64,000 nucleotides of DNA from Gekko japonicus. Its lineage: Eukaryota. Shown piece after piece: positions 27,501 through 60,102 of this stretch (the first letter of the stretch is position 1; every line of letters starts with the position of its first letter). The notes beneath the pieces are model-generated. The model was not told the origin of the DNA. It saw only the letters and a list, made by a program, of their open reading frames with translations, and did not search any database. The DNA lies in the NCBI RefSeq assembly GCF_001447785.1, contig NW_015172553.1:3153731-3217730 (forward strand), written 5' to 3'. The position numbers and the translations under genes are program-made.

Positions 27501-27508
27501 ATTGCACC

Positions 27509-27852: not shown

Positions 27853-27860
27853 ATTGCACC

Positions 27861-32640: not shown

Positions 32641-35600
32641 ATGCTGAGTGCCTTCTTGATTGCCCAGCTGGCCCTGTTGCTGAGCAGGGTGGGGCCAGGC
32701 CTGGTAAGTGGGGCCAGGGAGCCAGTGGTGGACATGCGGGATTAACTGGGGCTTCAGGTGGGGCAGGAAGTACTTGCTTTGAAAATGTATGGGTGGCATG
32801 TGAGAGGGGGCTGGACTTGCCTCCATCAGCTGCCCCTCAGTTTAGAAGCCTTTGGAGACAGATGACCAAGCCTGGCCAACTTGACTCTTTGGGGGGGTGG
32901 GGGTGAGTTATTTCTGGCAAGACCCAATATTGGCAAGCATTGATCAAAACTGTGCTTCTGAGCCTGTAGAAGTAGGAGCTGGCAGATGCAGTCTTTGCCT
33001 CGCATGGCTGGTGTGTGGTCTACAAGTGGTTCCCTCTCAAACAGTCCCTTAATGGTAGTACTTCACATAGGGTTGACAACCTCCAGATGGCAGCTGGAGA
33101 TCTCCCACTATTACAACTGTTCTCCAGGGAACAGAGAGAGTTCACCAGGGGAAAAATGGCTGCTTCGGAAGGTGGACTCTATGGCATTATACCTCACTGA
33201 AATCCTTCCCCTCCCCAAACCCCACACTCCTCAGGCTCCACTCCCAAAATCCTCAGGTATATTCCAACCTGGAACTGGCAACCCTAACTCCACAGTCAAT
33301 GTGTGTGTGGCCTTTTGTTGGTGTGCAAAAAAAGTGGTTGTGTAAGGGGGAGTCTTTGGATTACTCCCATTGCTGGCAGGCCCATAGCTACAGTGGGGCA
33401 TATCGGGGCTAGCCCCCCTGACATACTGGCAATGCCCCATTGCTTCCCATCCAGCCTAGGGCCCCTGAGCAGTGGTAGATGTGGGGAAGGAGCCAGGTAT
33501 TCCTTTAATTCGATTAGCCAGTGCCCCCTAAGAAATTTAAATGCCCCCCCTACTTAAAAAATCCTAACTACGGGCCTGATTGCTGGTAACTCTAAGTTCC
33601 CTTGCTTGAAAGCCAGTCGAATCCAACTCTAGGGGACGGTGCTCATCTCCGTTTCCAAGCCAAAGAGCCAGCGCTGTCCAAAGACTTCTCCATGGTCATG
33701 TGGCTGGCATGACTAAACACAGAGGTGCAACGAACACTGTTACCTTCCCACCGAAGCGGTACCTATTTATCTACTTGCAATTTCTTGCTTTCAAACTGCT
33801 AGGATGGCAGGAGCTGGGGCCAGAAAGTGACACGGCACTCGGGTCTCAAACTGCCGAGCTACCGACCTTCCAGTCTGCAGTTCAGCGTCTTAACCTATGA
33901 GCCATCGCGGTCCTCAAGTGCAGTACTAGAGAGAAGTTAATTTGGGGAAATGAGAAAGACAAATTAGTTTAGGTATGACAAGAGAGGGAATTTCTGCAGG
34001 GAGATCCCAACTGTGCTATCAGTGAGAGGGATAAGGGCCAAGGAGCATGAACAATCATGAGTGGCAGATTTATTTGTTTCTACCCCATTTTTCTCTCCAA
34101 TAGCGACCCAAAGCAACCTACAATATTGTTCTCCCCTCTTTCATTTTATTTTCACAACAGCCCTGTAAGATAGGTTAAGGTGAGAATGTGTGAGTGCCCC
34201 AAGATCACCCACTAAGCTTCTATGGCAGAGTGAGGATTTGAATCTGGGTTTCCCAAATCCTAATCAAACACACTGACCACTCCACCATGCTGGCTTCATG
34301 GTTTTATTAAGTGTTCAAAAAGTTGAGCAGTAGGCAGCGCCTCTTGGGCTACTAGGCTGCCCTGCATGAGGGAAGGGCATATTTCCCCTACCACATGAAC
34401 ACAGAGGACTACATATGACCCCTCAGTTTCCTCTACAGAATCGGGAGCCCATCAGATATGTCCAAGGTTTGCTCTCATTTGCCACCATTCAGTGCCCATG
34501 AAGGAAACCAGGTTGCAGTAAAACCAGAGGTGTACCTATGCAGTAAAACCAGAGATGTACCTAAGGAAGCATTTCAGGGTGCAGGGATGTAGATCACGGT
34601 AAGCAAAAAATTATTGAAGCAGAACAAGAGATGCCATTGCTCTGTGCAAACGTCTCATTTATGGCTGAGAAAAGGCAAGTGGCAACCAAGGTGTAGACTG
34701 ATAGATACGTAAACAAGATTTCTTTATGATAAACGTGAAGGCAGTTAACGCTGTGCTCTACAGACAGTAAAGTACCAAACCCAAACCAAAAGTTTTCAGC
34801 CCCAAAGGTAAACTAAAGGTAAAGGTTCCCTTGTTCGAAAGCCAGTCGAATCCGACTCTAGGGTTGCGGTGCTCATCTCCGTTTCAAAGCCGAAGAGCCA
34901 GCGCTGTCCAAAGACTTTTCCGTGGTCATGTGGCCGGCATGACTAAACACCAAGGCGCACAGAACGCTGTTACCTTCCCACCGAAGTGGTCCCTATTTAT
35001 CTACTTGCAATTTCTTGCTTTCGAACTGCTAGGTTGGCAGGAGCTGGAACTAGAGACGGGAGCTCACTCCGTCATGCGGCACCCCTGGGTCTCGAACTGC
35101 TGAACTACTGACCTTCCACAGCCTGCAGTTCAGCGTCTTAACCACTTGAGCCACCGCAGCTCCAAACCAAATGGCAAAATGGTGTAAATTAATTAGTCCT
35201 CTTGCTTTAGAAAGCAGTCTCATTTCTGCTATTCTGATAAAAGTACATATAAGCTTTCCCGGGGAAGGAGGCAAATAGATCAGGAAAGCAGCGCAGGGTG
35301 GAAGACTAAACTCCTGGAGTGACAGCTGTTCTCCAGACTGCAAGGATTCATGCTGAGTGAGCAACATCTAAAAAACGACAGCTCCCGACTTGGGAATTTC
35401 CTGTGCTCAATCCTAGTTAGGTCCTTAGAAGTCTATGCCGTTCCCACCCCCCCCCCCTCGCAGTCTTGTCTCCCTCTTGTCCAGCTTCTCCACCATCTCT
35501 CTTGGCTCCCTTCATCTCTTTGCATCAGAATAGTCACCAAGTCACGCATTACAAAGTCCTTGTCCCTTTCCTTGTTGGGTCAACACATTATCTGGAAGTT

Positions 35601-38600
35601 TGTGCTTGGAACTTTATTCCCAGTAGGGTTGCCAACTCCAGATTGGGGAACTCCTGGATATTTGAAGGCAGTGTCTAGGGATGGTGGGGTTTGAGAAGGG
35701 GAGACGGAGACCTCAGCAGGGTATGATGCCACAGACTCCACCCTCCAAAGCAGCTGGTTTTGTTTTTTTCCAGGCGAACTGATCTCTGTATCAGTTCTAA
35801 TTCTGGGAGAACCTTAGGCCCCATCTGGAGGATGGCAACATGAATTATATGGGGGGAAAGCAGAATATATTTAATAAATTATGCAGTCCAAAAGTATGTT
35901 TGAGATCTAGCTGAATTAGCAACACTTCTTCTGAGTGCAGAGTTCAGGTTTCTTGGCCCCATCCTGAATTTTATACACACCTGAATCCTCCTAACCCCCA
36001 ACCCACCTTCCTGCTGACTTCTTGTATTTCCTCTTTCTGGGCCCTGTGGAACCAAGGCTGCTGCTCCTACACAGATCCATCGTGCTGGATACTGTTCGTT
36101 CTACGACACGTGTGGCAAGAACCCCGAGATTAATAATGGCATTCTTACCCCCACTGTGCCTTGCGTCTCCAACACACAAGCCCGGCAGCTTTCTGGCTAC
36201 CACCTTGAACTCCTGAAGACGACCTGCCCAATGTTATACAAAGGGGCCAATGACACCTTTGCCTGCTGTTCCATTCTACAGCTGGGAGCGTTGAAGCTCA
36301 GCCTCACCATCTCCCAAGCGATTCTGTCCCGATGCCCATCATGTGCTGAGAACTTTGCCAACATCTACTGCCAGAACACCTGCAGCCCGAATCAAAGCCT
36401 CTTCACCAATGTCACTCGTGTCTTTAACACCACCACCATCTTCGACATAAAAAAGCAGGGCGTCTTGGAGTACCAGTGCTACTACAAACAGGATTTTGCT
36501 GACCGGTCCTTCAACTCTTGCAAGGGTGTCCGTCTGCCTGCCACTGGTGGCTATGCGATTGGTGCCATGTGTGGCAAATACGGGTCCACTTTGTGCACCA
36601 CTCAGCGGTGGCTGGATTTCCAGGGGGACTCAAGCAATGGGCTGGCTCCTTTGGCCGTCTTGTTCAAGTTGGTGTCAGATGACACCGTCGTTGGGGATGA
36701 CATTGTGCCACTCAATGCGACTACTTGGAAGTGCAGTGAACCCGTGAGAGGGAGTGGAGACAGATGCTCCTGCCCAGACTGCCCTGATTCTTGCCCTCAC
36801 ATCCCATCTCCCACCCCTGCACCTCCACCCTTTAAAGTAGGTAATATGCGTGGATCCTTATTTCTGTGCTTGCTTCTGTTCTGCCTTCTCACGCTGCTTT
36901 TTATGTCTTTCCTGGTGTGGCGATGTTGCTCCTCAGCTAAGAAATCAAAAGATCAGAGCCTCAAGATGGTGAGCAATGGGTTGACCTCTTCTGAAAAGCT
37001 TAGCCGGGCAATCCAGAACTTCCTGACCAGAGCTTTCAGCAGCTGGGGCATGCTGGTGGCCTCTTACCCTATTACAGTCATTGTCATTTCAACAGGGGTG
37101 GTGGTTGCGCTCTCCAGCGGAATAGTCTTCATCCAACTTACCACAGACCCTATAGAGTTGTGGTCCTCCCCTGACAGCCGGGCCCGGCAGGAGAAGGACT
37201 TCTATGATCAGAACTTTGGGCCTTTCTTCAGGACCAACCAGGTAATCCTGACAGCCAAAGGCCATCCCAACTACACCTATGATTCTCTCATCCTGGGCAA
37301 GAAGAACTTCAATGGGATTTTGTCGATGGATGTGCTAAAGCAGTTGTTGATCCTGCAGTCAAAGCTGCAAAACATTGAGGTCTGGTCTGAAAAGCATGAC
37401 AGGAATATTTCTCTCCAAGATGTCTGCTATGCACCTCTGAACCCCCAAAATCCCAGCCTCTCTGACTGTTGTGTCAACAGCCTGTTGCAGTATTTCCAGA
37501 ACAATCTCACTCATCTGGAGATGACGGCGAACCAGACAATAAACGGACAGCAGGGCACAGTGGACTGGAGAGATCACTTCCTCTACTGCATCAAGTGAGT
37601 GACAGATTATGGCTCATGTATACCACAGGCAAGGAGGGGGCTGGATGTTAAGTGAGGTGGCTAAATATGCCCCAGTGTGGAGACTGCATAGATTTGTTCG
37701 GGTTCGGGTCTGGCTGATTCCCATGTGGGGAGCCTGGAGCGAATTCCCACCCCCTGTCAGTTTTCCTAGCAAGCAATTCAAGGTAGATGGTTCCTTTCCT
37801 GTAAGGCATCCTGGTTTCATATGTAAAAGCCAGGGTACCTGCTTAACTTCCTCTTTTCTCATGACAAACTATGATCAGACAACTACAGCATTGTTTGGCC
37901 CACCCAGGTTGTGTGCTGCACCAACACACAATGCAGCTACTTTATACCCAGTCAGACCTTCGGGCTCCTAAGGTCAGAGAACAGAGGTTACAAGTGCAAG
38001 CAGGTCTTTAGCAGCTAGTCTTCCCCAACCCTGTCTTAGGGATCTTTTAAGTTTGTATATACACAAGTGTGTGTGATTGGTGTGATATTTTTGTGAAATA
38101 AGATAGAACCCTTCCAAATAATAAAGCTGACTTTACCGACTACCTGAAGGGGCAAAGATGAAGAGAGAGAAAGAGACGAAAATCACAGCAGCTCTCTTAT
38201 ATTAAGCAATGATTTCTTATTCTGCTGTTCTTCTCTGCCTACAAGTCATTTTTACATCTCAATGGCAGCTATAAATTTCCTAAGCACATTATTCTGCCCA
38301 CAATTAGTTTCAATGGAACCCACCTGTGAATGTTTGTGTACAGCACCCCTGAGGAAGAGAAACCGAACTGGGAGAGAAAAAGGGGGTGGGGAAGTCACAC
38401 TTTTCAGGGGCATGAGGAGATACTGAGAGAAAGAAGCTGTACTTATGGAAGCTCGGATTTGGGTGTGTGTGTGTGTGTACAAGCACATATGACAGGAAAA
38501 GAGGCATGCTAAAGGGAGGAGTGAGTTAGTAGTGGAGAGAAAATGATAGTGATTGTCTGAAATATCATCAAGGAAGGGGAAAAGAGAGGGGAAGGAGAAA

Positions 38601-41600
38601 GTGACATCAGTGTGGCCTGTAATCTAATTCAGTTCACTGGCTCATGGCGAAAAAGATTGTGTGCTCCCACCTCCTTTGCCGTTTAAAGAGTAGACAAAGA
38701 AACGGGAAGAAAGCTGTAAACTCAAATCCCCGCGCCTCTGAGTGCAGGAAATGACTGTTAATCAGCCAGTCACAGGGATGCTTTGGGATGTCTAACTAAA
38801 GACTTCAATTCCCAGGGGCAACTGCTCTTAAAGATATATGGCAGTTCTACTTAAAACTACAGTTAAACGCTGGCTGGGGGCAGCACAGTGGCCTGATTCC
38901 TTAAGAACGGGCATTGCTCCAGTCTGAAGGACAGATTTTGGGGAAGGGAAAGAACTAAGGACTCCCCAGCCTAAAAACAGATCTTTTATCCACACTGTTC
39001 TGGTAGTTGCTATCCTCCAGGGGGAACCTGGAGTTCTCCTGGAATTACAACGCATCTCTAGACTATGGAGATTAGTTCCCCCAGAGAAAATGGAAGCTTC
39101 AGAGGGTAGAGGGGGATCCACATGAATTCACATCCCTGCTGAGCTCCCTCCCCAAACTTTGCTCTCCCCACACTCTGACCCCAGTCTCCAGGAATTTCAC
39201 ATGCCAGAGCTGGCAGCCCTAATTTGTGGAATGACCATTATGCTTACAGCATGCCTGACAAGATGTAAAAATGTATAGGAATTACCTTACTGAAAACTTC
39301 ACGGGGGGGGGGGCTGTTATCCTTGTGAAAGGATAATTCTGTTATTGCTAGCTCGTGAGAAATTTCCACCTAATGTTCTGAATAGGGATGCTTGAATACC
39401 TGCTAGTTTGGCTCACATCTGAGAGTGGTGATCAGGCACCCAATTAATTTGCAGGCTGTTCACGGCCTGTCTGCATCTATTCGAAAGAACAGGCTGCTTG
39501 CAGTCATCAGAAGCTGACTCTGAGCTTGTGCCTAACTGGCTGGGAGTCGGTTTCTGATTTCCTGCTGTGGAAATTTTTCTCTCTATCCTGCCAAGTTTGG
39601 GGGGTTTTTTTGGGGGGGAGGAATCAGGACTCCCAGCTGGTTGCAGCTGTCAGGTCCTTCTGATCTCCCAACCAGGAAGCTTCGCTACATCTCAGGTTTG
39701 CTGAGATGCAGCAAAGTTATGTATGTGTGGGTAGTCGGTGATAAGAAGTATAGTCAGGGGTCATTTCCTGCAGGAGCACATAGGAGCGGAGCTCCGGCAG
39801 TAAAGAGCCCAGGGGGCGGGCACATGCAACAAGCCCCACCCCCTGCTCCCAGCAGCCCTCAGTCAGAGCAAGAAGCAGCCAGGTAAGCTGCAGAGCTCCC
39901 CCCAGCCCCCTGGTCCGAAACAGTCCAGTGGCACCTTTAAGACCAAGTTTTATTCAGGTACAAGCTCTCCCTCCTCTGCGAGGACAGATCTGCACGTTTC
40001 CCCCCCCCCCAATAGCTAGCAATCCAAAACAGTCCAGTGGAGCCTGAGCGGTGGGTATTGCCTTCTGACACACTTCAGATGATGTCAGGGGGTGTGGCAC
40101 ATGCAAATATCATGCTAATGAGTTATGCTAATGAGCTCCTGCACCTCTTTTTCTACGAAATGACCCCTGAGTATAGTTGATTCCACTTCTGCCCTCCCCG
40201 AGCTGATAGCTACACCTGTAGAAAATAGGAGACTGTTCCTGTTCTTTGTAGCCCAAGCTCTTACTCTGAGGTGTGTTACGGGGAAGAAATTTATTACTTC
40301 TCCTCACCAGGCTCACCTCCATCTGTCAGTTTGAGCCACAGAAAAAGGAGATTAATTGTTTCTCTCTCTCTCTCTTTTGAAGTAGGGAGATCAGAAGCCA
40401 ACCACTTCTTTCCCCACCCCCCAACTTGGAGTGGTGGGAAGAGAAACAATTTGTTTCTTCTCTTTTTGTTGCAACACAGATCAAAAGCCAGTCACTCAGC
40501 TTCACCATGTAGCAATTTTTCTGAGGAGGATGGATCAGAGACTCATTCCTAGCCGATTCCCCTTCCACTGTGCCCCAGCACAACAAGCCCTGTCTGCAGG
40601 AAAGTGGTGGGAGATCAGACCCCAACTCCAAGCTCAGGCCCTCATCAGCTGTGAGTAGGTTTTTGATGCAACAGGCAGCTGCAAACTGGTTCAGCAGTTG
40701 TTTGATGCAAGGTGAACATATCCCTGATCAGCTGATGGTCTGAATGTGTCAAACAGAATATGTTTGACTACCAAACGGCTTCCCTGCAAAACTCGTGGCA
40801 TTTCTAGTTCTGGTCAGAAATGCTAAAAATTCTCTTCATTTTTTGGATGATCTCCTGATGTCAGTATGAACCACTATAAATTATCAAAACGAATTACTTG
40901 AGAATGGGACACCGCCCCCCCCCCCCCCCCCCCCGCCCACCCCTGCGCTATACAATCAGAAAACCGGAGGTCCTTCCCCCAAAAGTTTTTCCCCCCTACA
41001 GTTGCCAGCCTCCAGGCAGGGCCTGTAGGTCTTCTGAAATTAAACTGATTTCCAGACCTAAATCAATTTCCCAGGAGGAAATGTCTGCCAGAGCATTACC
41101 TTATGCCCAAGGCAAGACTATAAAACTGTGTCCCCTATACTTTCATACTAGTTATTTTGGTTAAAAGGTAAATATATAAATAATGGGTCGATTTGTTTTG
41201 TTGCATTTGGTCAAAGCCACAGCACAGCTCCCCTGGAGAAAATGGCTATTTTGGCCCCTCCCTTCCCCAAGCCCTGCCCTCCCCAGGCTCCACCCCCAGA
41301 ACGTCTAGGTATTTCCCAGCCCACAGCTGGCAACTCCAAGCTAGTAAGCCATGCATGGTCTTCCTTATTCACAAGAGATAATTTTTAGATATACAGAGAA
41401 ATAACTAACAAGAAGAATAACAGTCATGAGATTGGCATACAAAATCAACTAATGCATAAGTGAGTATTCAACTTACTGTTTTAAATATACAAAATTAAAC
41501 CACATCAGGTACAACCACTTTTTACAATTGCACTTTTCACACTTTCAATGACATTAACATTTGACCTTTTTTTTTTTAATTTTTAAAGCTTACCACCAGA

Positions 41601-44600
41601 AAACTTGGAACATTAACATGACCTGCCTAGCACTGATGAGTTGAAAGATCTTAACTGTTTCTTTTTCAAACTTTCTCTGATGCCACAAAGCAACCAATCA
41701 CTGTTTTTGAAAAGAGAAGAAAGAGTGGGGGCCTGGAGCGCTCCCAGAATTTACAACTCATCAGACTAAGGATTAGTTCCCCTGGAGAAAATGGCAGACC
41801 GTCTGGCATCATATTCTTCTTCAGCTCCCTCCCCTTCCCAAAGTCCACCCTACCCAGTAGGGTTGCCAGGTCTGTGTCAGAAAATACCTGGAGACTTTGG
41901 GGGCGGATCCAGGAGAGGGTGGGACTTGGGGAGGGGAGGGGCCTCAGTACAATGCCATAGAGTCCCCCCTTCAAAGCAGCCGTTTTCTCCAGGGGAATTC
42001 CAAAAACAACATCCGTGACAAAAATAACAAAGAGTCAATAAAGATAAGTTGCTAAAATGTTTACTGTAGTAATTTCTGTAGAAAATTTTCTTCTATTATC
42101 GCTCACACGCTAACGAATACAATACGCAATGAACAATTTGTTTCACAATATTTGGGTTCTGTTATTAGAGAGTCAACATGGAATGTTTCCTTCAAGAATT
42201 GATAAGTAGTGATTGATAAGAATTGAGATTGCTACATGCTCAGATAAAGCAAATATTGTGAAACGAATTGTTCATTGCTCGGTATTCGTTAGCGTGTGAG
42301 CGATAATAGAAGAAAATTTTCTACAGAAATTACTACAGTAAACATTTTTGCAACTTATCTTTATTGACTCTTCGTTATTTTTGTCACGGATGTTGTTTTT
42401 GGAATTCCACTTCCTCCCGTGTTCTCTCATTTATGTTTTCTCCAGGGGAGCTGATCTCTGTCAGCAGGAGATCAGTTGTAAAAGCGGGGGATCTCCAGGC
42501 TCCACCTGGAAGCTGGCAACCCTACCAGTCTCCATCTCTAAATCTCCTGGAATGTTCTTACCTGGAGTTCCTGACCTTATTTCTCTCTTATGGTGCAATT
42601 CCTAATACTGAGGAAGGGCCCCATTTCTAACTTCTATTGCTTCATCTTTAGCCCAATCAACATAGTTCAGGGGCCTTCCAGAAGGCTGCTTTTCTTCTAG
42701 TGGAAACTTGGAATGCTGAAGGTATCTCCCTCACTCAGTGCAACAATGGGGGATGGGCTTTCCCCCTCCGATTATCTATTTATGGCTTTGTCTTATTCTC
42801 TTAGCTCACCGCTCTCCTTCCAAGACATCACAGAGCTGAAGCTGAGTTGTATGGCAGACTATGGAGCTCCTGTGTTTCCCTTCCTGGCAGTAGGGGGTTA
42901 TCCAGGTAGGAGATATATGACTTTGCACAAAAGAGATCACGAGTTGCAAACTAATGTCCACAACTAGTCAGGTGTCCATCAGAAGACCAGGGACATACCT
43001 CCCCTTTCAACAAACAGGGTTGACCCAGGTGTCCATCTAGTTGGAGACTCTTCCTTCTCCCAAGTTTTCAGCTGTCCCTTGGAATTTAGATTGTGTCATT
43101 TAAGCAAGAGGTGTGGTTCCTGACATGCTCTAAGGGAACTGCTTATGTACATCACACTCTGTACCATGAAGGGAAAGGCCAGAAAAGATTCATTTCATTG
43201 CTGTATTGCTAGGGAAGATTGGAATATTGAAACCAACCAGGAGCAGGCCTGAGTGTCCCCTGCACTGCTGACTCCACAGGAACCACTCAGTTCAGACCAG
43301 CCAGTAATGATGACAGTAGACACAGGCTTGCCTTTTGCTGCTGGCAAAGTCCAAGCTGAGTGGCTCCTGGGGTGCCACTGCCTGTGTCTCAGAGGTAGTT
43401 TGCTAAGCCAGGGGCTCTCCAAGGCAGCAGCCCATTAGGACCTTTCCTGGTAAGCTGAAAGGCCAGTCCACCCCTGGGTGCAGAGTCCTTCATATAAACA
43501 AAGCCCTAAAGGCATTTGGACACTCAAGGAACTACTGAGGCCCAAAAAAATCAATAAAACAGAGCTAGAGAGCAGAACAGGAAGGTCCTCACAGCCCAAG
43601 TTTTCCTGGAAAGAGAAAGTTTGGAGAGCTCGTTCCCGTGGAGCGCTGGAATGCTGAACTTATCTCCCTAGCTTGATGCAACAATGCGGGGATGACTAGC
43701 TTGGCTAGAGAAGGTCAAAGCTGCGGATTTTAAGCCTAGCCCAGCCCATCAACTGAAAGAATCCAAGCCTCCCTGAGGCACCAGTCATTGTGACCATGTC
43801 CAAGACAGTTTCGATCCCTTCTATTTGCATTCAGCTCCAGAGCAGGAATTTCTGACCTTCCACAGGTCTTACTAGCGCCATCCAAGGGAACTCTGATAAT
43901 TCCTCAGTTAAAATCATTTATGGCACTCAGTGCAGTAGCGTCTTTGCTTTGTGGTGAGCGTTATGGATGGCAGAGGGATTTTCTTGGCAAGTTGCCTAAC
44001 GTCTTATCAGCAGAGCTAATTGCTTGAGATGACTTCTGGGCAGGTGAGTCAGGAAGAAACAGGTAAAAATACATTACAGTCCTCGAGTTCCAAAGTACTA
44101 TCCTCCTCTGGTGAGCATAGAGCACTGTCCGTGGCCTGGAGATAGCGACTATTTCTGTAACACCTCCAGGGAAAAGAGAAGTTCCTCGTGTTTAGGCATG
44201 GTTTCAGGTGGTAGCTGTGTTAGTCTGAGAGCCAGTTTGGTATAGCGGTTAAGAGCACGGACTCTAATCTGGGAGAACTGGGTTTGATTCCCCACTCCTC
44301 CACATGCAGTTGCTGGTGTGAACTTGGGTCAGTCATAAATGCTTTCAGAGCTGTTCTCTCAAGGGCAGTTCTCGAGAGAGCTCTCTCAGCCTCAGCTACC
44401 TACACTCTGAGACTCCTTCGGGTAGTGAAGGGTGGGGGTATAAATCCAATCTCTTTTTCTTCTAATAGCAGAATAAAATTTGAGTCCAGTAACACCTTAA
44501 AGAACAACACAACTTTCAACGGTATGAAGCTTCATGAGTAAAAGTTAATTTGGCCATATAAGTAATGAGGAGGGCTAAACTTATGTTGTCCCCTGCCCAC

Positions 44601-47600
44601 CCCCAGCCGTAATCAGGTTGAAAGTCGGGAACTGTGCCTTGATCATGGAGGGGAGGGGAGGGGGGGACTGCGTAAGAGGGAGTGGGACTCTCTGGCTTCC
44701 CTGGGGTTCTGTGTTCACTGCTTCTTGATTCCTTTTCTATCTACCCCATAGGAGAGGAATACTCTGAATCCCAGGCACTCATCCTTACCTTTTCCTTGAA
44801 CAACTACCTCAGCAGTGACCCCCATTTTGACATGGTGATGTTGTGGGAGAAGCGATTCCTGGAAATTTTAGGGAAATTCCAGCAGGAAAGCAGGAATATG
44901 CTGACAACTATTCCATTGCCTACATGGCTGAGGTATGGGGGGGCATTCAATCTCTTCTCTAGCCATCAAGGGCAGTTTGATCACAGTCGGACACAAAGGA
45001 GTGGGCCAATCCTTTCTCCTGCCATCGTTAGCAGGGAGCACAAACTACCTTCCTTGACCATGGGTGCTAAAGCCAGGTGGGATTTAGACTGAAGGGAACT
45101 TGTGAGGAGTTGGAGGCCAATTAGGTTGCTCCATCCTTGGAATATAATGGATCCAAATGGACTGCAGCTGCCCACTGGGAATTTCTGGCAGCCATGCCTG
45201 GTGCTCCTGCCAAAGCCTTAACTGATGTATGGAATTAAGAAATCACACAGGAGGTTGACATAACTGCTCCCTGCCTATAGAGCCCATTTCATTCCTTGCT
45301 TCAATGAGGAGCTCAGAGTGGGTTTTCTTGCAGGAGAAAGGTCCTGCTATCATTGCTCCTTGACCTCTGATCTGATTGGTGCATTCTAACCAGCTGCTGT
45401 CTTTCCCCACAAACTTCAGCGCTCCCTGGAGGATGAAATTAACCGCACCACCTGGGAAGACTTCCCTATCTTTGCTATCAGTTACTTGGTGATCTTTTTG
45501 TACATCACGCTGGCCTTGGGCGAGTACTCCAGCTGCACACATCTCCTGGTATGAAAGGCTGCTCGAGCACGGGCGGGGGCAAGGAATCAGGCAGACCAGG
45601 GTGGGGAAGCTTGTCCCTGTGGAGGTGATTTTAGCCTGCCTTCTATGGCTGTCAAGACTTAGTGGGGATGTTTTTCAACAGAGCAGAATGCGCAGATAGT
45701 ATGGAAAAAACCGTCACCCCAAAATAAATTGCTTCCAAAATAGAAGGAAGGAGAGGAAGTAAGGCAGCATACGCCAACAGAAGGCACAGTGCAAGAAGTG
45801 CATGCAGAATGCTTGCGCTTCCCTTAGGAAGAGACGGGCTTGGTTCCGGCAGCAGACACACCCTTAATTGCCCTTAACAAGGGTATCAAGAATCTGGTGT
45901 TCACCCATTCAGAATGCTGGCAGCAGATGCCTCAACCTCCTGTACTCTGTTCCATGAATTAAATATATGAAACAGGCATAGCCACATAAATGTATTTAAG
46001 TTGAATGTTTTGTGGGGATTGCAGTTTTTCATGCTTGTTTTGTTAAGGCTTGTGGGACAGCATCTTTGAGAGCTACAGAACATTAACAAGCCTAGGTCTG
46101 TGTTCCTCACAGAGTGCCCCCACCTTTGTCAGAGCCGCCACAATGGAGATGATTAAGGAGACAAAATTCCAGGAGCCTTGGTCTCCCCAAGGGCCCACAG
46201 TACTATGAGAACCACACAATTAGCTTTCCTATGATAGTTTGGTTGGCTATGGGTAGTAAGGGCCCAGAAGCCATCTTTGCCTGTTGGAACTGTGATGGTT
46301 CTTAGCAGACTTGCTCTCTCCTTAGTCATTAGCAGACATTGCCCAAATGATAGACACATGCTCTTAAAGAAATTTTCCATATTCCATAGTTTACAACTAT
46401 AGGTCTTTAGTCTTTGCACCCTTCCAGATCAAGGCAATGCAGGAGTCAAGACTAACCCCTCTTGGGACAGCTCATCACAATACCCGGTTAAAGGAGAGAG
46501 ACCCCACCCTCCTCCTTCCTGTCTATAATCACCCTACCATCCCTTAGAAACTGGCCAATCGCCATCCCTTTCCCTTCACATTGCTTTGCCCCAGTACAGC
46601 CAGCTTGGTGAAGTGGTTAAGAACAGTGGACTCTAATCTGGAGAACCGGATTTGATTCCCCTCCTCCACATGCAGCCAGCTGTGTGACCTTGGGTCAGTC
46701 ACAGTTCTCTCAGAGCTCTCTCAGCCCCACCTACCTCACAGGGTGTCTGTTGTGGGGGAAGAAAGGGAAGGCAATTGTAAGCAACTCTCAGACTCCTTCG
46801 GGTAGTGAGGAGCGGGGTATAAAAAACAACTCTTCTTCTTCTTGTACTTATCATGTTGTTCCTTTTTCAGGTGGACTCCAAGGTGACACTAGGCCTCGGT
46901 GGGATCCTGGTAGTGGTGGGGGCCGTGCTGTCTTCTTTGGGATTTTTCTCTTATGTGGGGCTGCCCTCCTCCCTCATCATTGTTGAGGTTGTTCCCTTTC
47001 TGGTCTTGGCGGTTGGTGCTGATAACATCTTCATCTTCGTGTTGGAGTACCAGGTGCGAAGAATGTCCATGAGACATGAGATCAGAGATGCAGATACTTG
47101 TGTCCCCAGGCAGCTTTTCCTTAGAGGTGTGGGTAAATGGAGGGATACCTGTGAGCAGGGGATATATTCTCACCTTACCATTTTCCTGGAGTAGCCTGGG
47201 TTTCGGACTCGACTGATACCAACCTGGAGCTATTTCTGCACCTCAAGAGGGCTGGCTGGGACCAGCCCCATAGTTAGGGAATTCTTTGGGAGGGGGCCTC
47301 GGGGCCCCCCGGCCAACTAATTAAATGAAAGTACAGTGGAGGTGGTAAGTTGGAGCACTTTGGAGGCAGCCCAGGAGGGAGGGGGCCTAGAAGAAACATT
47401 AGGGGGCCAGGCCCCATGTTAGCTACGGGCCAGGCTGGGACCATCCCCATTTGGGAACAGAGGAGGAAGCCATGCTGGGTGTGCTCTGTAGTAGGGTCTC
47501 TCCTTGTAATCTCTCTGTCCATCTTTGCAGCAATCTGAGCAGCAGCCAGGGGAGAGCAGGGAGCAACACATTGGACGAGTGTTGGGGAATGTGGCTCCCA

Positions 47601-50600
47601 GCATGTTCCTCTGCAGTCTTTCTGAAGCCATCTGCTTCTTCTTGGGTGAGTGGGTTGCTGCTTCTTCTGCCACCTCATCAGATTGAGTGCAAAACTCTAA
47701 ATAAGAAATGTTCAGGTGAATGTTCTATGAAACTGCCTGGAATATCACATCAGAGTATTGGTGTATCTAGCTCATTCTTGTCTTCTCCAGTTGTCTTCAG
47801 CTCATGACTCAGGACCCCAGGTGGGACACAGAACCTCTCATCTGCTGCATTTTAAGCCTCTATAGAACCACTATTTTTCTGCTGCTTTTTATTTATTTAT
47901 TTATTAGATTTATACCCCGCCCTCCCCAGCGGGCTCAGGGCGGCTACAACAAAGGCAATTGCCATAACAACAGTTAAAAGAACATAAAAACAATCATTAA
48001 GTAAAGTGCGGTGCTCTTGATGTTAAAATTTTCTTAAACCAAGATGAGTTCCATTCATCAACCTAACCTGACAGCATACATTCTTTGGTTAACTAGGCGT
48101 CTGCCTAGGGCCGGCTCATCTCCAGGTCTAATCCACCGTTGAAGATGGCAACTCGGTGGTGGTACAGTGACGGCGGCGGCTCCTATGCAAAGGCCTGGCG
48201 GAAGAGCTCCGTCTTGCAAGCCCTGCGGAACTGCACCAGGTCCCGCAGGGCCCGAACCTGCTCTGAGAGCTCATTCCACCAGACAGGAGCCACCACCGAA
48301 AAAGCCCCGGCCCTGGTTGCAGCCAGCTTGATGTCCTTGGGGCCGGGAACCATCAATAGGTGCTGCGACCCCGACCGTAGCGCTCTTGGGGGAACATATT
48401 GAGAAACGCGGTCCCTTAGGTACGCTGGACCCTGGCCATTTAGAAGAATCTGCACTTAGTGCACATGTATAGAGAGCAAGAAACCACCCCTTTTGCCTCT
48501 CTTTGCACATCACAATGAACCGAGGTCACTCAGTGGGAGAGAGGATTTTTCCATAGTTCCAGCACTTGGCTGCTCGCTACGGTACATATCCTGGTGTTCA
48601 GCTTGTGTTTCCTGTCTCTGATTTTTCCCCCCCATTTTCTGCCCATGGCACCAGTGACATCACCCTGGCTCCCCTCTGTCGCGTGACAGGGATGGCACAT
48701 GAAATCCTGTCAGCTGTTTGCTGTGGGTCCTGGGCCTGGAAAGGCTGGACACACTGGTCTGGTCTGCCCTGACTGAAAGTAGCTCTCCAAGGCTTGAGGC
48801 TGAGAATGGGCTTCCCCAGCACCTGCCATGTGATGCTGCCAGCCATTGAACCTGGGACCTTCTGCATGCAGAACAGGTGTTCTGGACTGAACAGCAGCCC
48901 TTCTTTATGGCTTGACTCAGGCTGGCAACAGGAGCCACAGAGAAATGGGCTGAACTGCTAGAAGGTCTCTTGGATGGTTGGCCAGCGATAGGGCTTCTGC
49001 AGATATATTGAAGAGCCGCTGCAGGGGCCCCGGTGTGGATCGAGCTTGTCGGCTGAAAAGCCCAACACAACACTGATTCAAAGAATTCTGAAGACAAGTT
49101 TTAAGTGTTTTCTCAGAATGTGAAAAGAGAGCAAGGCACTCTTGGTGGGTGCAATAACGTAATGACTGAACTATCAATTCTTGCCTGACTGGCTACTTCA
49201 TCTCTCTGTAGGTGCTTTATCAGAGATGCCGGCAATTCGGACTTTTGCCCTCAATTCTGCTATGGCCATCCTCTTTGACTTCCTGCTTCAGATGACCACG
49301 TTTGTGGCCCTGGTGTCTCTGGATGCCCGCAGGCAGAAGGTTGGGGAGCTCTCCTTTGAGAGTTATACAATCAGTGTGTGGGGTGGGGATGGTATTGTCT
49401 TGTGTTTCCTCTTTACAAAGCAGGAGGGCTCCCCAAGGCTAACTCAGTCCAGGGTGTTAATGGCCTGCAGGTGAGTAGGTCACACACCCCTGCTCCCTGC
49501 ACTGTCCCCTATAATACCACCTTTACCATGCCAGGCCTCACGTTTTGACCTGTGCTGCTGTGTTCGCCTCGAGAAACGGGGAAAGGTGAAAAAGCACAAG
49601 AACCTCCTTCGCTCTTTCACAAAGCGGTTCTATGTGCCTGTCTTGCTCAACAGCATCGTCCGAATGCTGGTGGTGAGTAGAACTGGAAGAACAGGGGGTT
49701 GCCTGGGATCAGGTGGCCCAGGACCTTGTAGGCCTGGGGAGTGTTGTGGTGGGGTGAAGAAACAGCTCCATCTCAGGAAGGGAAGCATTTTCACTGCAAC
49801 TGGTGCCTCTTTGTCTAGATGGTGCTCTTCATCTTCATGTTCTGCATGGGGATCTTCCTGATGTTCAATATCCAGGTGGGGCTGGATCAGGAGCTGTCTA
49901 TGCCAGAGGTGAGAGGCTATCTGTTTGCTGCATGGGTGGGAAACAAAGAGATTTCTCCATAAGCTGTTATAGTGATGGCAAAATGGAGCCTTCTCTCAGT
50001 ATCCTCAGGGGCTTAAGTAGTTGCCATAAATCTGCAGAAATCCTTATTTTATAGTCTTTTTTCTCTCACATATGAAGACTTGTTTCCTTTTGCTTCCCCT
50101 GTCCCATTCTTTTTAAGCTGATGTTGCCACTTGGCTCTGGCAAGGGGGCAATAGCTACCTTGCCAAGAAGTGGCAGAAAGGAGAACTATTAAAGGAGACT
50201 GGAGCATCACCTGCCATGTTCTGTGGTCCTTTTTGTCTGCAGGACTCCTACATGCTGAAGTACTTTCAGTACCTGAACCAGTATTTTATGGTTGGTGTCC
50301 CAACCTATTTTGTCACTACTGGGGGCTACAACTTCTCCTCATATGATGGAATGAATGGTGTCTGTTCCAGCACAGGATGTGACAATAACTCCATGACCCA
50401 GAAAATCCAATACGCCACACAGTTCCCCAAGGAGTAAGTTACCCTGAGCACTACCTCATGTGCAAGAATGTCTCCTGCCTGCCATATGTATTCATGCACA
50501 ACATGTATTTTTAAACAGCAAGGAGTTTCTTTTTATAGGTAGAATCTTCGATTGGGGTGTAATGAATTAAAGTTGTAAGTGTCTGTTTCTTTAAATGTTT

Positions 50601-53600
50601 GGTAAGTTGTAGAAGAGCAAGCAAGTCAAAGAGGAGGATGAGTGAGTGAGGTGATTGGTTGGTGACTGAGAGTGTATGGGCAGAGCTAAGAAGTGTGGAG
50701 AGAGAGAAGGTAGCAGTCAGTCGGTCTGCAATTCACAGTCAGTTGTGGTCAGTCAGCTGACTACAGAGTCTGAGAAGCACTCTTCTGATTAGAATCCCAT
50801 ATTAGTGCTGTGAAAAGCATTTAAGATTTTAAAAAGAAAATAGAATACTGTAGAGGACATATTAGCGACTAGTCAGAGTACATTCTGAAGAGAAAGGAAG
50901 ATTTGAGAGTGAGGAATGTTTGTGAAGTGAAAGGGAGTGATACCTCAGTCAGGAGTTATTAATATACAGTATTTTATTCACAAAAGAGATAAGTTACAAA
51001 TCATCTTGAAACCAAGACGCTTCTTGTACAAATAACGTTTTATTGTGTTTATTGTTAACCTGGAGTTCTATGCTATTAAAATATAAGAGTCTCATCCTCA
51101 GGACCACATAGTGCAATGGAGCCTTAGAGCTTGGGAACAATACTGTGGGAAAGGTTAATTAATAATATTGGCATTAAATTCCTGGTGACAGTGTTACAGA
51201 CCCAGAGAGAGAAATAACAAGGAAGTTAAAGACACACCATATTTAACCACACAAATTAAAAGCGAAGTCGTGGCATGGGGTGAGAAGGGGGTGATTATAA
51301 TACAACAGCTGCAGAAACACAGATGGCATTTCATTTAGAATGTGAAGCAGCTGCAGCAATTTCTACCCCCTAGTTCCCCAACCCCCATGAGAATGGAATA
51401 CCCAGCCACAAGGAAGTGCAGAGCCAGGGCTAAGTCTCCCTTACTGACTAAAAACACCCCATGTATGGTTCTATCCACTGGCTATTCCAAAATTTCACAA
51501 AGCAAAATCTAGAATTCAAAATCCTACCTTCAAACACAAATAAAGTCAGAAAAAACGTGAGCAACAACCTCCTCCTCAACCTTTCAGTGTCTTTTGGTGT
51601 GCAAAGTTCTGACTGCCCTCCTGAAGGCATATTCTGAGGCAGTGAACCTCCGAAACCCAGTGCTAGAAGGCAACATCATTGGAGGGGTGAGGCATCCATG
51701 TTGTTTGTTGGCTCTCCAAAACACAACTGGTCAGCCGTGAAACAGGATCTTGGACAAGATGGACTATCGGTCTAATCCAGCAGGGCTCTTTTTATGTTCT
51801 TAATTATGAAGCCATGCCTTCTGAGGAAATCCCCAGAACATTGGTGTCTAAAACGTCGTGATGGAGAGGAATTTAGAGCAGGGCTTCACATTGTGCCACT
51901 TTATACTGAGTCAGGCCATTGGCCTATCAAGATCAGTTTTGTCTACTCTGACTGGTAGTGGCTCTCCGGGGTATCAATTAGAGGCCTTCATCATCTGCCT
52001 GATCCTTTTAGCTGGTGATTGAACCTGGGACCTTATGAATGCAAGGGGAAAATGTATGTGAACCTAACACACATTCTCAGAATTTCAAAGAGCTCAGAGC
52101 AAGCTCTCTGTTCTTAAAAGATCCAGCATTTAAGCCTTCTTGTATATATGTGTGTTATATACACACACACACACACACACACGTATGGGGGTAGGAAGGA
52201 GAAAGGCTGGTCCTTAGCTAACAAGAGGAAAATGTTAAAACACAATGTGTATTCAAATCAGGCTTTGAAACTTTGAAAGGAAATTTCAACTAAACAGCTG
52301 TGAAAGCTACGTATTGGCTTTGATAGGCCACCTCACATCTCTGGAGTAGATTGGTAGAAATTATTGGCATTTTCCAGCACATACATTTAGCATTCTGTTT
52401 GCATGAGGAAGGCATTTGGGTTCTCCCAACTTTCCCATCCATAAGAGAAGGACAGGAGATTTTGAGTTGCAGACAAAGTGGATCTGGGTTAGCTGATTAA
52501 CCTTTTTAAAAATACACACACACACCCAGCATGTTGCACTCCTGAAGTTCACCGAGGCATGGATGACAGTGAAAAATGTTCTCAACTTCCAGGAGCTGGA
52601 AAACTACATGGGCAATTGTCAAAGCTAGCAACAGGCAACTCTGGGCAAAGTTTCCTATAGGGGCTGTCTCTCTTCTAGTAGGTGGTAACATAGTTAATTT
52701 AAGAGTGGCCCCCAGAGAGGCTAGAAACCAAACCAGATGAGAGTCTGGAAATTCTGGAGTTCCCAGTGTTTTTAAAAATTCAATTACTGAGTATGATTAG
52801 GGAATTTAATGAAACACGGGAGGCTTTTAAGTACCCCACTCCTTTCCCCAATCTGAAATGGCCTGGGAAAGCACCACTATCTGCCCCATTGGGATATAGA
52901 GATACTTGTATTAGTCAGGAATGAGGCCATTGCAGACTGGGAAAATGACATGAGGGAAAGTCTTAACTCCCCCCTCTCCTCACACTGTGGTCCCATTCTA
53001 AATTGGGCCCCCATGTACCTGCTAATTGAAAGCACTGGGCTCTCTAATCCCAGAATTCCCTGCCTTTCATCCAGTTTGGCCCAAATGATTACATTACATT
53101 TACAGGTCCTACCTGGCCATTCCTGCCTCTTCGTGGGTAGATGACTTCATAGACTGGCTGAATCCCATGTCCAGCTGCTGCCGCATACAATCTGGCCAGT
53201 TCTGTGACTCTACAAACAGTAAGTATTTCTGCAGCAAGGAGGGCTGGGAGCAGTGTGGGAAAACATGCAGCCCAGATAGCAAAGGGATGGGGGAGAGGAA
53301 GAAGGCTGTTGGTTTTCCTCAAGGAACTGCAGATGCCTGCCTGGATCTAGGGCTTGACGTGAGAGCCACCTCCCCTTTTCCTTTGGCAGCAGACCAATAC
53401 TGCTCAAAGTGCATGAAGCTGACAACTGACACTCTCCGGCCTGACGTGGAACAATTCAACGAATTCCTGCCCTGGTTTCTCAATGACACACCTAATCTCA
53501 ATTGTCCCAAAGGGTGAGTGTTGCCAAATGGGTTAGGCCAGCAGGGCTTGGGCTGCTGTTTCCACAACTATATCCACTCCCATATATAGCTGGGACATCT

Positions 53601-56600
53601 GACAGATAATAGCCTGGTACGATACTGAGCAATCTGCTTCCGTGAGTTCTAGTGGTGTGCCTTGCTGAACATTTACTGAAATATTAACCATGATGGCCCA
53701 GAAAGCATATTTTAACATTTAGAAGGTATGAAGGTGAATCTTTCAACCATCTCTCCAAATAATGACATTTTACTAGGCAGTGGCAGCAGGGATTATCTCT
53801 AGTTCTGTGCAGAGTTGGGACCATGTGGCTGAAGCAGACACTCCAGTTTGTTTCATCAAGGGCAGTGCAAGGCAACTCTAGCCGCACACCAGACTTCTGC
53901 AGCATCTCTATGGACGGAAGTCAACCACCCTCTGTGTTGGGTATTGGCTTTTCTCTTTTGTTTGATTGTGTGGTCAGAGAACAGATGGCCATTTTAACCA
54001 CTTCCTTGTGCTGTGGCCAAAAAACAAGTTGGCTCCAGGCTAGCTGGACCTGGGTTTGGGCATGGATGGGCTGGACTGCTTGTGTGTTGCTTTCTGGGGA
54101 GGGTGCCTTTTGGCCCCTTTCTTTTTTGAAGCTGAGATTCAGTCCAGAGAATCAGGCCCCTGGTGTGAACAGCTGCTGCTTGTCAGGTGTGTTCTCCTCT
54201 AGAGGGGTTAGCATCCTAGCCATGCTCTTTATCTGCATTGTTCAATTGACAGGGCAGTTCGGTATTTATCTGTTCCTCCTTCACTCACCCTGTCCCCTTC
54301 TGTCTTTGCAGGGGCCGTGGTGCCTATGACACATCAGTACGACTGGGGCCAGATGGAGAAATCCTGGGTGAGAAGCCTCTCTTTCTCTGAGGCTGCATGG
54401 AGCAAACAATGTCCATGTGGGGATGAACAGTTGCCCCCCAAGGAGGGTCCTGGGTCTCTCGTTCTATGGGGGAGAGGGTACAGATGGGATGCAATGTCAT
54501 TTTCTTAGCATAAATTTGGAGGTGGCAAAGTCATTTCAGCTGCTCTTCCACTCTGAATGTGGAAGGGGCTTGGATGGTCAGCACTGGCCCATATAGGAAT
54601 CTCCATCTGAGATCACAGCCAGTAAAATGAGAATCTCTGGCTTCCCACAGCTTCCCGGTTCATGGCTTATCACACACCCCTCAAAAACTCGCAAGAGTAC
54701 ACAGCGGCACTCAAGGTGGCACGAGAGTTGTCAGACAACATCACAGCCAGCATGCGGAAAGTACCAGGAACGGATCCCAGTTTCCGAGTCTTCCCATACT
54801 CGTAAGACCGCATGAGCCATTATGGAAGAGGAGCTGGGGGTGTGTGTGGTGTGGTACTTGCCAGTAAACTATAATAAGGAATTGAGGTGTCTGTAAGAGC
54901 CACAGGGTTGTTGTGTCCCATGGCAGGAAGGAAACGTCAAAACCCCATATCTTGACAGGACCTGAAAGTCAGGTTCAGCTTAGTAAATGAGTGTGTGCCA
55001 TAGCCAGAGAGGAGGACAGAAAGTGTCCCACTCATTCAAGAAAGACATAATCCCAACACTTGTAATGAGTAAGTCATAAGAATATAAGAGCAACTGTGCT
55101 GGATCAGGCCAATAGTCCATCAGTTTCAGAGGCCTGTTTCACACAGTGGCTAACTAGATGCCTCTGAAAGGTCTGCAAGCATGGCATGGGAGCAAGAGTC
55201 CCTCACCCCGTTGTTGTTCTGCAACAGAGGGTTAGTGTCTCTGACCAATCAGGCTCCATTGAGTCACTGTGACAGCCACTCAAGGACTTACCTTGCCCAT
55301 GAATTTTTGTCTAACCCCTTTTTAAAGCATAACAAAGCCAACAGTGGGGGGAGAACAGATTTCTTCCCTTGGAAGGCAGGAGCAAAGTTGGTTTCTGTAC
55401 TCCAGCACTCCTTAAAGCCTCTCTTTTTGCAGGATCACCTATGTGTTTTATGAGCAGTATTTGAACATTGCCATAACAGGCTTCGTCAACTTGGTCTTCT
55501 GCCTGGTGCCCACCTTTGTTGTGTGCTGTGTCCTGTTGGGCATGGACTTGCGTTCGGGCTTCATCAACTTGCTCACCATCATCATGATTGTGGTGGACAC
55601 TGTGGGAGCCATGGCATTGTGGGGGATCTCGTACAATGCCATCTCTCTCATCAACCTAGTGACGGTAAGCTATGCCTGGCTCTACAAGAAGTAGTTTGTG
55701 GTTTGCGAAGTGAAGTTTGTGGTGGGTCAACTGACTTGAACTTCCCACAGACTTTCAAGCAGTTCCTAGAAGTTTGTGCAGGTTCCTGAATGGAGACATT
55801 TCCAGACAGACTCTGTCTGCTCAAACAAAATGTTTACCGAATTTCAAAACAGTCAGTTTCAGACTTGTCCTGTCAGTTTCAAGAGGTTTTCACACACACA
55901 CCTTTTGCCAGCATTCTTCTAGTGTTTGCAAAAAAAAAAAAAAACCCCTTACTTGGAGTGTGATTCTGTGCTAGACATCAGTCCTGCTGAGCTGGCATTA
56001 CCACCATGGCACTGGATTCTGCTGGGCACTCTTTGATTGCACTGGTACTGCTGGGCACTCTGTACATTGCACTGGTTCTGCTGGGCTTGTCAAAATGCCC
56101 CCACAACCACTTTCAGTTTCTGCTACAGAGATTCTCTGGCTTTACCTTAGTCCTGTTGGGTTTGAACTCCCACAGTCACAGTTTCTGCTGGGCACATTGC
56201 ACTAGCTCTGCTGGGCTTGCAAAAATGCCCCCCTCCCAGTTTCTACTGCAGAGATTCTCTGAGACTTTGATTCTGTTCTGCTGGGCTTCTATTGCCCTTG
56301 CAGGTTTTTGTGGGCTTTTTGCTGCTTTTGGAAACAATAGAGGATGGGGGCACCTTGGGGGGGGGGCTGTAACTCGAACCCTGTAACTCCAATCCTCATC
56401 AAACTGGGAGGGCAGGTAGAGGAGAATCAGTTGGAGATCCCCTGCACGTTTGGTGTCTCTAGCATGCTGGGGGACCATTCTACTGCAACACTACTTTCAC
56501 AGATTCATTTAGCCTCTAAAAGTTCGGGATGGTTTGTGGCTCAAAAACTGGGTATACCACAAACCACCAACCGTCACAAACTGCATTTTCCTGGTTTGTG

Positions 56601-59281: not shown

Positions 59282-59467
59282 AGAAGGACCCAGCTGCTAC
59301 GTTCAATGTATATGCATGTTTGTGGCGTGTCTACACAACAGAACTCATGCTGCTAGCCTAACCATCTGACAGTAAGCGATCTGGCATCTCCCTGACAATC
59401 CCTATCCTAAGTTTTCAAACTGGAAACACGTGTGCTTGTTTTTACCAGACAGAAGAGCAGCTCCTCC

Positions 59468-60102
59468 CGTAAGCTAGAGAGAGAGGAATGGGAAAAAACA
59501 TGGAAATCTATTAAACTATTAAGAGCTACGTCCTACAAAGAAAATATAATAAAAATGATATACAGATGGCACTGGATGCCAGATAGGCTGCAAAAATGTT
59601 ATGTAAATGTTTCAGGGAACTGCTGGAGGTGTAAAAATAACATAGGAACGCATTTCCATATATGGTGGAAATGCGAGAAAATACAAAGATTCTGGAAAAC
59701 TACTAAGCAGTTGATAAAAGATATTACAGAAATAGACTTACTGTACCATTGAGCCCAGAAATCTTTTTATTAAACATTACACCTGACGGTCTTAAATATA
59801 ATGAAACATGTATTATTGCATATGTAGCTACAATGTCGAGAATATGTATCGCAAAGAATTGGAAGTCGGATAATATACCGAGTAAAGAAGAGTTGATAAG
59901 CAAGCTTTTTGACGTAATAGAAATGGATAAATTAAATATGTACTTGGTGGGAAAAACAGAAGATAAATTTAACCAAAAATGGCATAAGGCCATAAAATGG
60001 TACGAAGAAAAACTGTAATGTTAACCCCCAAATTGTTATTAAAGGGGAGATAAATGTATGTAAATGATGGGAAAACTGTAAATAAAACCTATATATAAAA
60101 AA
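59468..60102 (+). mobile_element. L1-clade (L1/Tx1-type) LINE 3' fragment just downstream of the NPC1L1 stop
   Basis: ORF2 C-terminal zinc knuckle CWRCKNNIGTHFHIWWKC with one frameshift near 59750. AATAAA 60081-60086 and polyA tail. 17-bp TSD AGAAGAGCAGCTCCTCC at 59451-59467 and 60103-60119. Confidence 0.9.

What the first reader, a model, noticed from the sequence alone, without database searches (positions are those of the whole stretch)
44881..44896. NPC1L1 is frameshifted by an 8-bp tandem duplication in exon 4: candidate loss of the dietary-cholesterol transporter
Seen: exon 4 (44752-44932) is 181 nt and contains AGCAGGAA twice in tandem. With one copy removed it is 173 nt, reads ...[16 protein letters not shown] and joins exon 5 ([11 protein letters not shown]) in frame. 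With both copies, the frame shifts after about codon 613 and reaches TGA at 45490-45492. That gives a ~651-aa product with many downstream exon junctions, lacking the sterol-sensing domain and all later TM helices. Skipping exon 4 does not restore phase, and the +5 alternative AG runs straight into TGA. The other 18 exons keep frame and have GT-AG sites. Established: NPC1L1 mediates intestinal cholesterol uptake, is the ezetimibe target and needs its SSD; such premature stops usually trigger NMD. Inference: a very recent null allele or incipient pseudogenisation in this lizard, or a consensus artefact. It is not a homopolymer-type error.
Basis: partly seen in the sequence, partly recalled or inferred. 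Interest (0 to 1): 0.85.

Follow-up and report, generated by a model that had tools for sequence, protein, structure and literature searches.

The report
Unconfirmed NPC1L1 frameshift, gecko draft assembly
The Japanese gecko draft genome really does carry an 8-base duplication that breaks the cholesterol-uptake gene NPC1L1, but it is the gene's only defect, so an assembly error is more likely than a true gene loss, and no sequencing reads could be examined here.

Summary
AGCAGGAA occurs twice in tandem at 44881-44896, inside exon 4 of NPC1L1. The frame shifts after Glu613 and meets TGA at 45490-45492, giving a 651-aa product without the sterol-sensing domain.

The window is Gekko japonicus assembly V1.1, built from Illumina reads only with SOAPdenovo and SSPACE. 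NCBI already annotates this gene as "LOW QUALITY PROTEIN" (XP_015276574.1). Its model matches the window exactly over 19 GT-AG exons, except that it drops bases 44892-44893 to mend this one site.

In 24 other tetrapod sequences, including Gekko kuhli, this segment has a fixed length equal to the single-copy reading. The 760 codons downstream show no second lesion and no extra change on the G. japonicus branch. The lesion is therefore either very young or not real.

Unchecked notes from this scan report many similar 5-28-nt frameshifts in essential genes of the same assembly.

My odds:
- assembly artefact, about 0.65
- real heterozygous or segregating null allele, about 0.2
- fixed loss, about 0.08
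- splicing or recoding rescue, about 0.02

Interest is low until reads are checked. Runs from an independent animal are named for that test.

The parts
44881..44896 (+). Perfect tandem duplication AGCAGGAA AGCAGGAA. It is an 8-nt insertion relative to all orthologues and causes the frameshift.
   Evidence: TRF; sequence; alignment of 25 sequences
44892..44893 (+). The two bases (AG) that NCBI's model XP_015276574.1 leaves out to restore the frame. This is the only place where that model departs from the window.
   Evidence: Exact mapping of P0272 to the window
44752..44932 (+). NPC1L1 exon 4, 181 nt (173 nt with one repeat copy). It encodes the C-terminal end of the middle luminal domain.
45420..45548 (+). 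NPC1L1 exon 5 ([43 protein letters not shown]). It encodes the helix that leads into the sterol-sensing domain.
45490..45492 (+). Premature TGA reached in the shifted frame. It lies in exon 5 of 19, so nonsense-mediated decay is expected if the lesion is real.
   Evidence: the NMD expectation rests on established knowledge
32641..59281 (+). The whole NPC1L1 gene: 19 exons, all GT-AG, encoding 1379 aa in NCBI's mended model. Exons: 32641-32703, 36057-37594, 42805-42905, 44752-44932, 45420-45548, 46871-47053, 47531-47645, 49212-49339, 49535-49672, 49819-49908, 50243-50433, 53106-53218, 53390-53513, 54312-54367, 54651-54801, 55433-55664, 57203-57316, 58101-58263, 58950-59281.

Best explanation
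The gene is the single-copy orthologue of NPC1L1 in Gekko japonicus and is most likely intact in the animal. On this reading, the second AGCAGGAA copy is a local error of the 2015 short-read draft assembly (Gekko_japonicus_V1.1). It would be a small spurious duplication introduced where de Bruijn contigs were joined, extended or gap-filled. What is shown: the duplication is in the assembly, it is the only defect of the gene, and it is absent from all relatives. What is inferred: that it is absent from the animal's DNA.
For: (1) The window is G. japonicus V1.1. XP_015276574.1 (P0272) maps at 100% identity to 19 exons. (2) That assembly is Illumina-only, built with SOAPdenovo plus SSPACE, with contig N50 29.6 kb and 335,470 contigs. 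(3) NCBI's pipeline labelled the model LOW QUALITY PROTEIN and mended exactly this one site. The meaning of that label is described in the paper read. (4) There is one lesion in 1379 codons, and all 18 junctions are GT-AG. (5) There is no relaxed constraint downstream. Identity to G. kuhli is 95.3%, and changes unique to G. japonicus number 11 against 7 for G. kuhli. (6) The segment length is invariant from Xenopus to primates, and Gekko kuhli reads [16 protein letters not shown], identical to the single-copy reading. (7) As leads only, not checked by me: this scan holds 31 'frameshift' notes in 765 windows of the same genome. They include 5-28-nt indels in PLOD1, HOXA13, GTF2H5, KHK, PHKG1 and ABHD3. 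A follow-up also found WDR83, WDR83OS and STX10 broken yet otherwise conserved. That is far more than one viable animal should carry.
Against: No read-level evidence was obtained. A perfect 8-nt tandem duplication is also a classic product of replication slippage. Inside a de Bruijn contig every k-mer comes from reads, so if the site is not at a joined or filled gap, the duplication must exist on at least one haplotype. The genome paper's main text does not mention GapCloser, so the exact error mechanism is conjecture. NPC1L1 null alleles are tolerated in mice and humans (established knowledge), so a real null allele is not implausible. The genome-wide pattern of broken genes rests on unchecked notes.
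Confidence: 0.65

Rival explanations
1. A real germline 8-bp tandem duplication, heterozygous in the sequenced animal or segregating in the population. The assembler would then have kept the null haplotype. The animal would still have one working NPC1L1 copy, and the null transcript would be removed by nonsense-mediated decay.
For: The duplication is clean and perfect, as slippage produces. The single lesion with no decay fits a very young allele. It is absent from relatives. NPC1L1 loss-of-function heterozygotes are healthy in humans (established knowledge).
Against: The base rate argues against it. One animal carries few heterozygous multi-base coding indels, whereas this draft appears to hold very many broken conserved genes (unchecked). 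No reads were examined.
Confidence: 0.2
2. A real, homozygous or fixed loss of NPC1L1 in Gekko japonicus, that is, very recent pseudogenisation. The 651-aa product would lack the sterol-sensing domain and all later helices, so intestinal sterol uptake through NPC1L1 would be abolished.
For: The frameshift and the premature stop in exon 5 of 19 are real in the assembly. The truncation point, residue 613, lies before the SSD at 671-823. Formal splice rescues all destroy the invariant AYMAE segment.
Against: There is no second lesion in about 2.3 kb of downstream coding sequence. There is no excess of amino-acid change on the G. japonicus branch (11 against 7). Gekko kuhli and another close gecko carry the intact form. 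NCBI treats the gene as coding and flags it for low quality.
Confidence: 0.08
3. The duplication is real, but the gene still makes a working protein through a cryptic splice site or recoding.
For: 29 donor/acceptor pairs formally restore the exon 5 frame without a stop, for example a GC donor after 44942 used with the normal acceptor.
Against: Every such pair replaces or deletes the segment [23 protein letters not shown], whose core is invariant across tetrapods. Each must also outcompete the canonical donor GAG|GTATGG at 44932/44933. No recoding signal was looked for or seen.
Confidence: 0.02

Closest known systems
RefSeq XP_015276574.1, 'LOW QUALITY PROTEIN: Niemann-Pick C1-like protein 1 [Gekko japonicus]'
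   Same: It is the same locus and the same lesion. The model is 100% identical to the window's 19 exons.
   Different: NCBI silently mends the frame by dropping 2 nt. This leaves two extra residues (QQE-SE-YADNY) that no other tetrapod has. It does not say whether the lesion is real.
Gekko kuhli NPC1L1 (KAL8174111.1) and other gecko orthologues
   Same: It is 93-97% identical at the amino-acid level and matches the window exon by exon in tblastn. Its sequence is identical on both sides of the duplication.
   Different: It carries a single copy, with an uninterrupted frame.
Human NPC1L1 inactivating alleles and Npc1l1-knockout mice (established knowledge, not searched here)
   Same: Truncation before the sterol-sensing domain would be a null allele. 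Such nulls are viable and lower sterol absorption.
   Different: Those are verified alleles. This one is unverified and sits in a draft assembly.
Single-lesion 'broken' conserved genes in the same draft assembly (scan notes s1-818634, s1-830833 and others; LWS single stop reported in the paper read)
   Same: Each shows one disabling change in an otherwise fully conserved gene.
   Different: I did not check them. The lesion types vary and are mostly deletions of 5-28 nt.

Membership tests
NPC1L1 (orthologue of human NPC1L1) | NPC1 N-terminal sterol-binding domain and middle luminal domain | tested here: met
   Pfam NPC1_N at 32-286 (E 1.8e-66) and NPC1_MLD at 401-628 (E 2.4e-71) on P0272
NPC1L1 (orthologue of human NPC1L1) | Sterol-sensing domain / Patched-type transmembrane core | tested here: met
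   Sterol-sensing at 671-823 (E 1e-52) and Patched SSD at 650-805. The exons are intact in the window but out of frame as assembled.
NPC1L1 (orthologue of human NPC1L1) | Closer to NPC1L1 than to the paralogue NPC1 | tested here: met
   Exon 2 against PDB: rat NPC1L1 549 bits against human NPC1 259 bits. The best database relatives are all named NPC1L1.
NPC1L1 (orthologue of human NPC1L1) | Conserved neighbourhood (TMED4 - DDX56 - NPC1L1, as at human 7p13) | tested here: inconclusive
   There is a DEAD-box helicase upstream (Pfam DEAD hits at 10080-11048). TMED-like and DDX56-like ORFs were recognised by eye. The human gene order comes from memory.
NPC1L1 (orthologue of human NPC1L1) | Uninterrupted reading frame | tested here: not met
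   There is a frameshift at 44881-44896 and a TGA at 45490-45492. This holds for the assembly only.
Unitary pseudogene / lineage-specific gene loss | Disabling lesion confirmed in reads or in several individuals | not testable with these tools
No same-species ORFs were found in the protein collection.
Unitary pseudogene / lineage-specific gene loss | Further lesions or relaxed constraint after inactivation | tested here: not met
   There is a single discrepancy in 1379 codons. Unique changes downstream number 11 against 7, and identity to G. kuhli is 95.3%.
Unitary pseudogene / lineage-specific gene loss | Lesion shared with related species | tested here: not met
   G. kuhli, a close gecko-like Logan ORF and 22 other tetrapod sequences are single-copy.
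Draft-assembly indel artefact | Assembly method prone to local multi-base indels | tested here: met
   Illumina only, SOAPdenovo plus SSPACE, contig N50 29,574 bp. That such pipelines make these errors is general knowledge; no supporting paper was found.
Draft-assembly indel artefact | Two-copy form absent from raw reads | not testable with these tools
Draft-assembly indel artefact | Many other conserved genes of the same assembly broken in the same way | not tested
   Only unchecked scan notes support this. I did not test DDX56 and TMED4 in this window for lesions.

The most novel reading that the evidence does not exclude
The duplication is real and homozygous or fixed. Gekko japonicus would then be a natural knockout of NPC1L1, the ezetimibe target. 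It would be a vertebrate that has just lost its main intestinal sterol-uptake route, caught before any secondary decay of the gene.
Probability: 0.08. Interest if true: 0.6.

Novelty: not a real feature. Interest (0 to 1): 0.15.

Why it matters
If the lesion were real and fixed, it would be a rare natural knockout of a drug target. It would also be a handle on how an insect-eating reptile manages sterol balance. As things stand, the main value is cautionary. A single clean frameshift in an otherwise perfectly conserved gene of a 2015 short-read draft, already flagged LOW QUALITY by NCBI, should not be counted as gene loss without reads. The same caution applies to the many similar notes this scan holds for the same genome.

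Tried and rejected
- **Same-species ORFs from independent read assemblies.** The exon-4 ORF query and the exon-2 ORF query found only other species, at most 86% identical. Neither the one-copy nor the two-copy G. japonicus form is on record.
- **Literature.** Searches for NPC1L1 pseudogenes or loss in reptiles found nothing relevant. Neither G. japonicus genome paper mentions NPC1L1 (no pseudogene mention of it). A search for papers documenting gap-closer frameshift artefacts gave nothing citable.
- **DDX56 as an in-window quality check.** There was no PDB relative, and Pfam matched only the DEAD-domain ORFs. I abandoned this check.
- **Splice rescue.** I enumerated the options and rejected them.
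- **Joined model.** I did not build a joined spliced coding sequence or send one to any search tool. Exons were searched by reference, and NCBI's own model P0272 served as the full-length protein. Only adjacent exon pairs were joined inside scripts, to place junctions and the stop codon.
- **Assembly gap.** The N run at 31552-31873 was left as it is.

Full report
**Observation.** The sequence at 44881-44896 is AGCAGGAA AGCAGGAA. It is a perfect two-copy tandem repeat of period 8. It lies in an exon bounded by AG at 44750-44751 and GT at 44933-44934.
- The frame starting at 44754 reads [45 protein letters not shown] and then turns into unrelated sequence.
- The frame starting at 44753 reads ...[14 protein letters not shown] up to the donor.
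- The next exon, 45420-45548, reads [43 protein letters not shown].
- With both copies, the last correct residue is Glu613. A 38-residue foreign tail follows, TGA is reached at 45490-45492, and the product is 651 aa.

Perfect 8-nt tandem duplications are not rare: the window has 4 against about 1 in shuffled sequence. The case therefore rests on the comparison with orthologues, not on the repeat itself.

**What the gene is.** The large exon 2 (36057-37594) matches rat NPC1L1 in the PDB at E 7e-164 (549 bits), against 259 bits for NPC1. An exhaustive profile-free search and a word-indexed search returned NPC1L1 orthologues from all vertebrate classes. The closest was Gekko kuhli.

The G. kuhli cluster has one other member. 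It is XP_015276574.1, [quoted passage not shown], 1379 aa, on a 3.55-Mb scaffold. That protein maps to the window at 100% identity in 19 exons, and all 18 junctions are GT-AG. The window is therefore Gekko japonicus assembly V1.1.

The only place where the NCBI model departs from the genome is 44892-44893. The model skips two bases there to restore the frame. It therefore reads [19 protein letters not shown], with two residues no other species has.

Pfam places NPC1_N at 32-286, the middle luminal domain at 401-628 and the sterol-sensing domain at 671-823. A stop after residue 651 would therefore remove the sterol-sensing domain and everything after it. A DEAD-box helicase gene (DDX56-like) and TMED-like exons lie upstream on the same strand. 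As far as I recall, this matches the human 7p13 arrangement.

**Comparison with relatives.** I aligned the segment in 25 sequences, from Xenopus and platypus to primates, turtles, alligator, snakes, lizards and six geckos. It contains no indel anywhere except the two extra residues of the mended G. japonicus model.
- Gekko kuhli reads [17 protein letters not shown], exactly the single-copy reading of the window.
- A Logan-derived ORF from a still closer gecko-like genome is recognisably similar even in the translated intron flank. It reads [17 protein letters not shown].

So the 8 nt are an insertion specific to this assembly or this species.

**Is the gene decaying?** No.
- There is a single lesion in 1379 codons.
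- Downstream of the break, G. japonicus and G. kuhli are 95.3% identical, and 97.4% in the membrane core.
- With Heteronotia and Paroedura as outgroups, changes unique to G. japonicus number 11 against 7 for G. kuhli. Upstream the counts are 8 against 8.

The lesion is therefore either very young or not real.

**Can splicing rescue it?** Formally, 29 donor/acceptor pairs restore the exon 5 frame without a stop. Every one of them replaces or deletes the [23 protein letters not shown] segment, whose core is invariant across tetrapods. Each must also beat the canonical donor. Skipping exon 4 does not restore phase.

**Real or artefact?** The decisive test is to count one-copy against two-copy reads. 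I could not run it.
- The protein collection holds no ORF from independent G. japonicus read assemblies for exon 4 or exon 2.

The judgement therefore rests on context:
1. V1.1 is an Illumina-only assembly made with SOAPdenovo and SSPACE. Its contig N50 is 29.6 kb and it has 335,470 contigs. By general knowledge, that kind of assembly carries multi-base indels where contigs were joined or gaps filled.
2. NCBI's pipeline kept the gene as coding and flagged it LOW QUALITY. The paper read describes what that label means.
3. This scan's own notes on the same genome list 31 "frameshift" findings in 765 windows.
   - Among them are 5-28-nt indels in PLOD1, HOXA13, GTF2H5, KHK, PHKG1, ABHD3 and AP5B1.
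   - One follow-up found WDR83, WDR83OS and STX10 broken but otherwise conserved.
   - These notes are unchecked and count only as leads. If even partly right, they imply far more broken essential genes than a viable animal can carry, which points to the assembly.

Several points weigh on the other side:
- A clean tandem duplication is a normal slippage product.
- Within a de Bruijn contig the k-mers come from reads.
- The genome paper's main text does not mention a gap closer.
- NPC1L1 nulls are tolerated in mouse and man (established knowledge).

My odds are:
- assembly artefact, 0.65
- real but heterozygous or segregating null allele, 0.20
- fixed loss, 0.08
- splicing or recoding rescue, 0.02
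- the remainder unassigned

**Known or new.** The lesion in the assembly is already recorded implicitly by RefSeq's LOW QUALITY label. I found no paper on NPC1L1 loss in reptiles. The chromosome-level G. japonicus paper does not mention the gene.

That paper does provide what is needed to settle the matter, from an independent wild female: Illumina DNA (SRR22243198), PacBio (SRR22262064), visceral RNA-seq (SRR22574970) and the assembly on Zenodo.

**Verdict.** The gene-loss reading is unproven and less likely than an assembly error. Interest is low until reads are examined.

Noticed in passing
window 3327-5602 (+) and 10080-15700 (+): TMED4/TMED9-like exons (for example [26 protein letters not shown]) and a DDX56-like DEAD-box helicase gene lie upstream of NPC1L1 on the same strand. 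Pfam DEAD hits fall at 10080-11048. This looks like conserved synteny with human 7p13. I did not check these genes for frameshifts.
   Followed up: partly
window 31552-31873: The only N run in the window (322 N) lies about 770 bp upstream of the NPC1L1 start codon (32641). Part of the promoter region is therefore unsequenced. A CR1/L2-like reverse-transcriptase tail ORF (30906-31547, minus strand) abuts the gap.
   Followed up: no
window 26188-29623 (-): A cluster of long minus-strand ORFs (143-213 aa) looks like a retroelement with a tyrosine-recombinase-like part (DIRS-like). This was recognised by eye only.
   Followed up: no
window 59432-59752 (+) and 62018-62593 (-): Two ORFs carry the Cys/His knuckle typical of LINE ORF2 C-termini (CWRCKNNIGTHFHIWWKCEKIQRFW and CWHCKHSKGWYAHMWWECAEVKTFW). 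They lie just downstream of NPC1L1.
   Followed up: no
P0188 (Gekko kuhli KAL8174111.1) against window 36057-37594: The G. kuhli model lacks its N-terminus and a 32-residue stretch (the first membrane helix after the N-terminal domain) that the window's exon 2 encodes. This looks like an annotation gap in that record, which is also tagged UNVERIFIED_CONTAM.
   Followed up: no
literature, bioRxiv 10.1101/127654: That paper reports LWS opsin of G. japonicus as inactivated by a single premature stop in the same V1.1 assembly. It is another single-lesion case that would need read confirmation.
   Followed up: no
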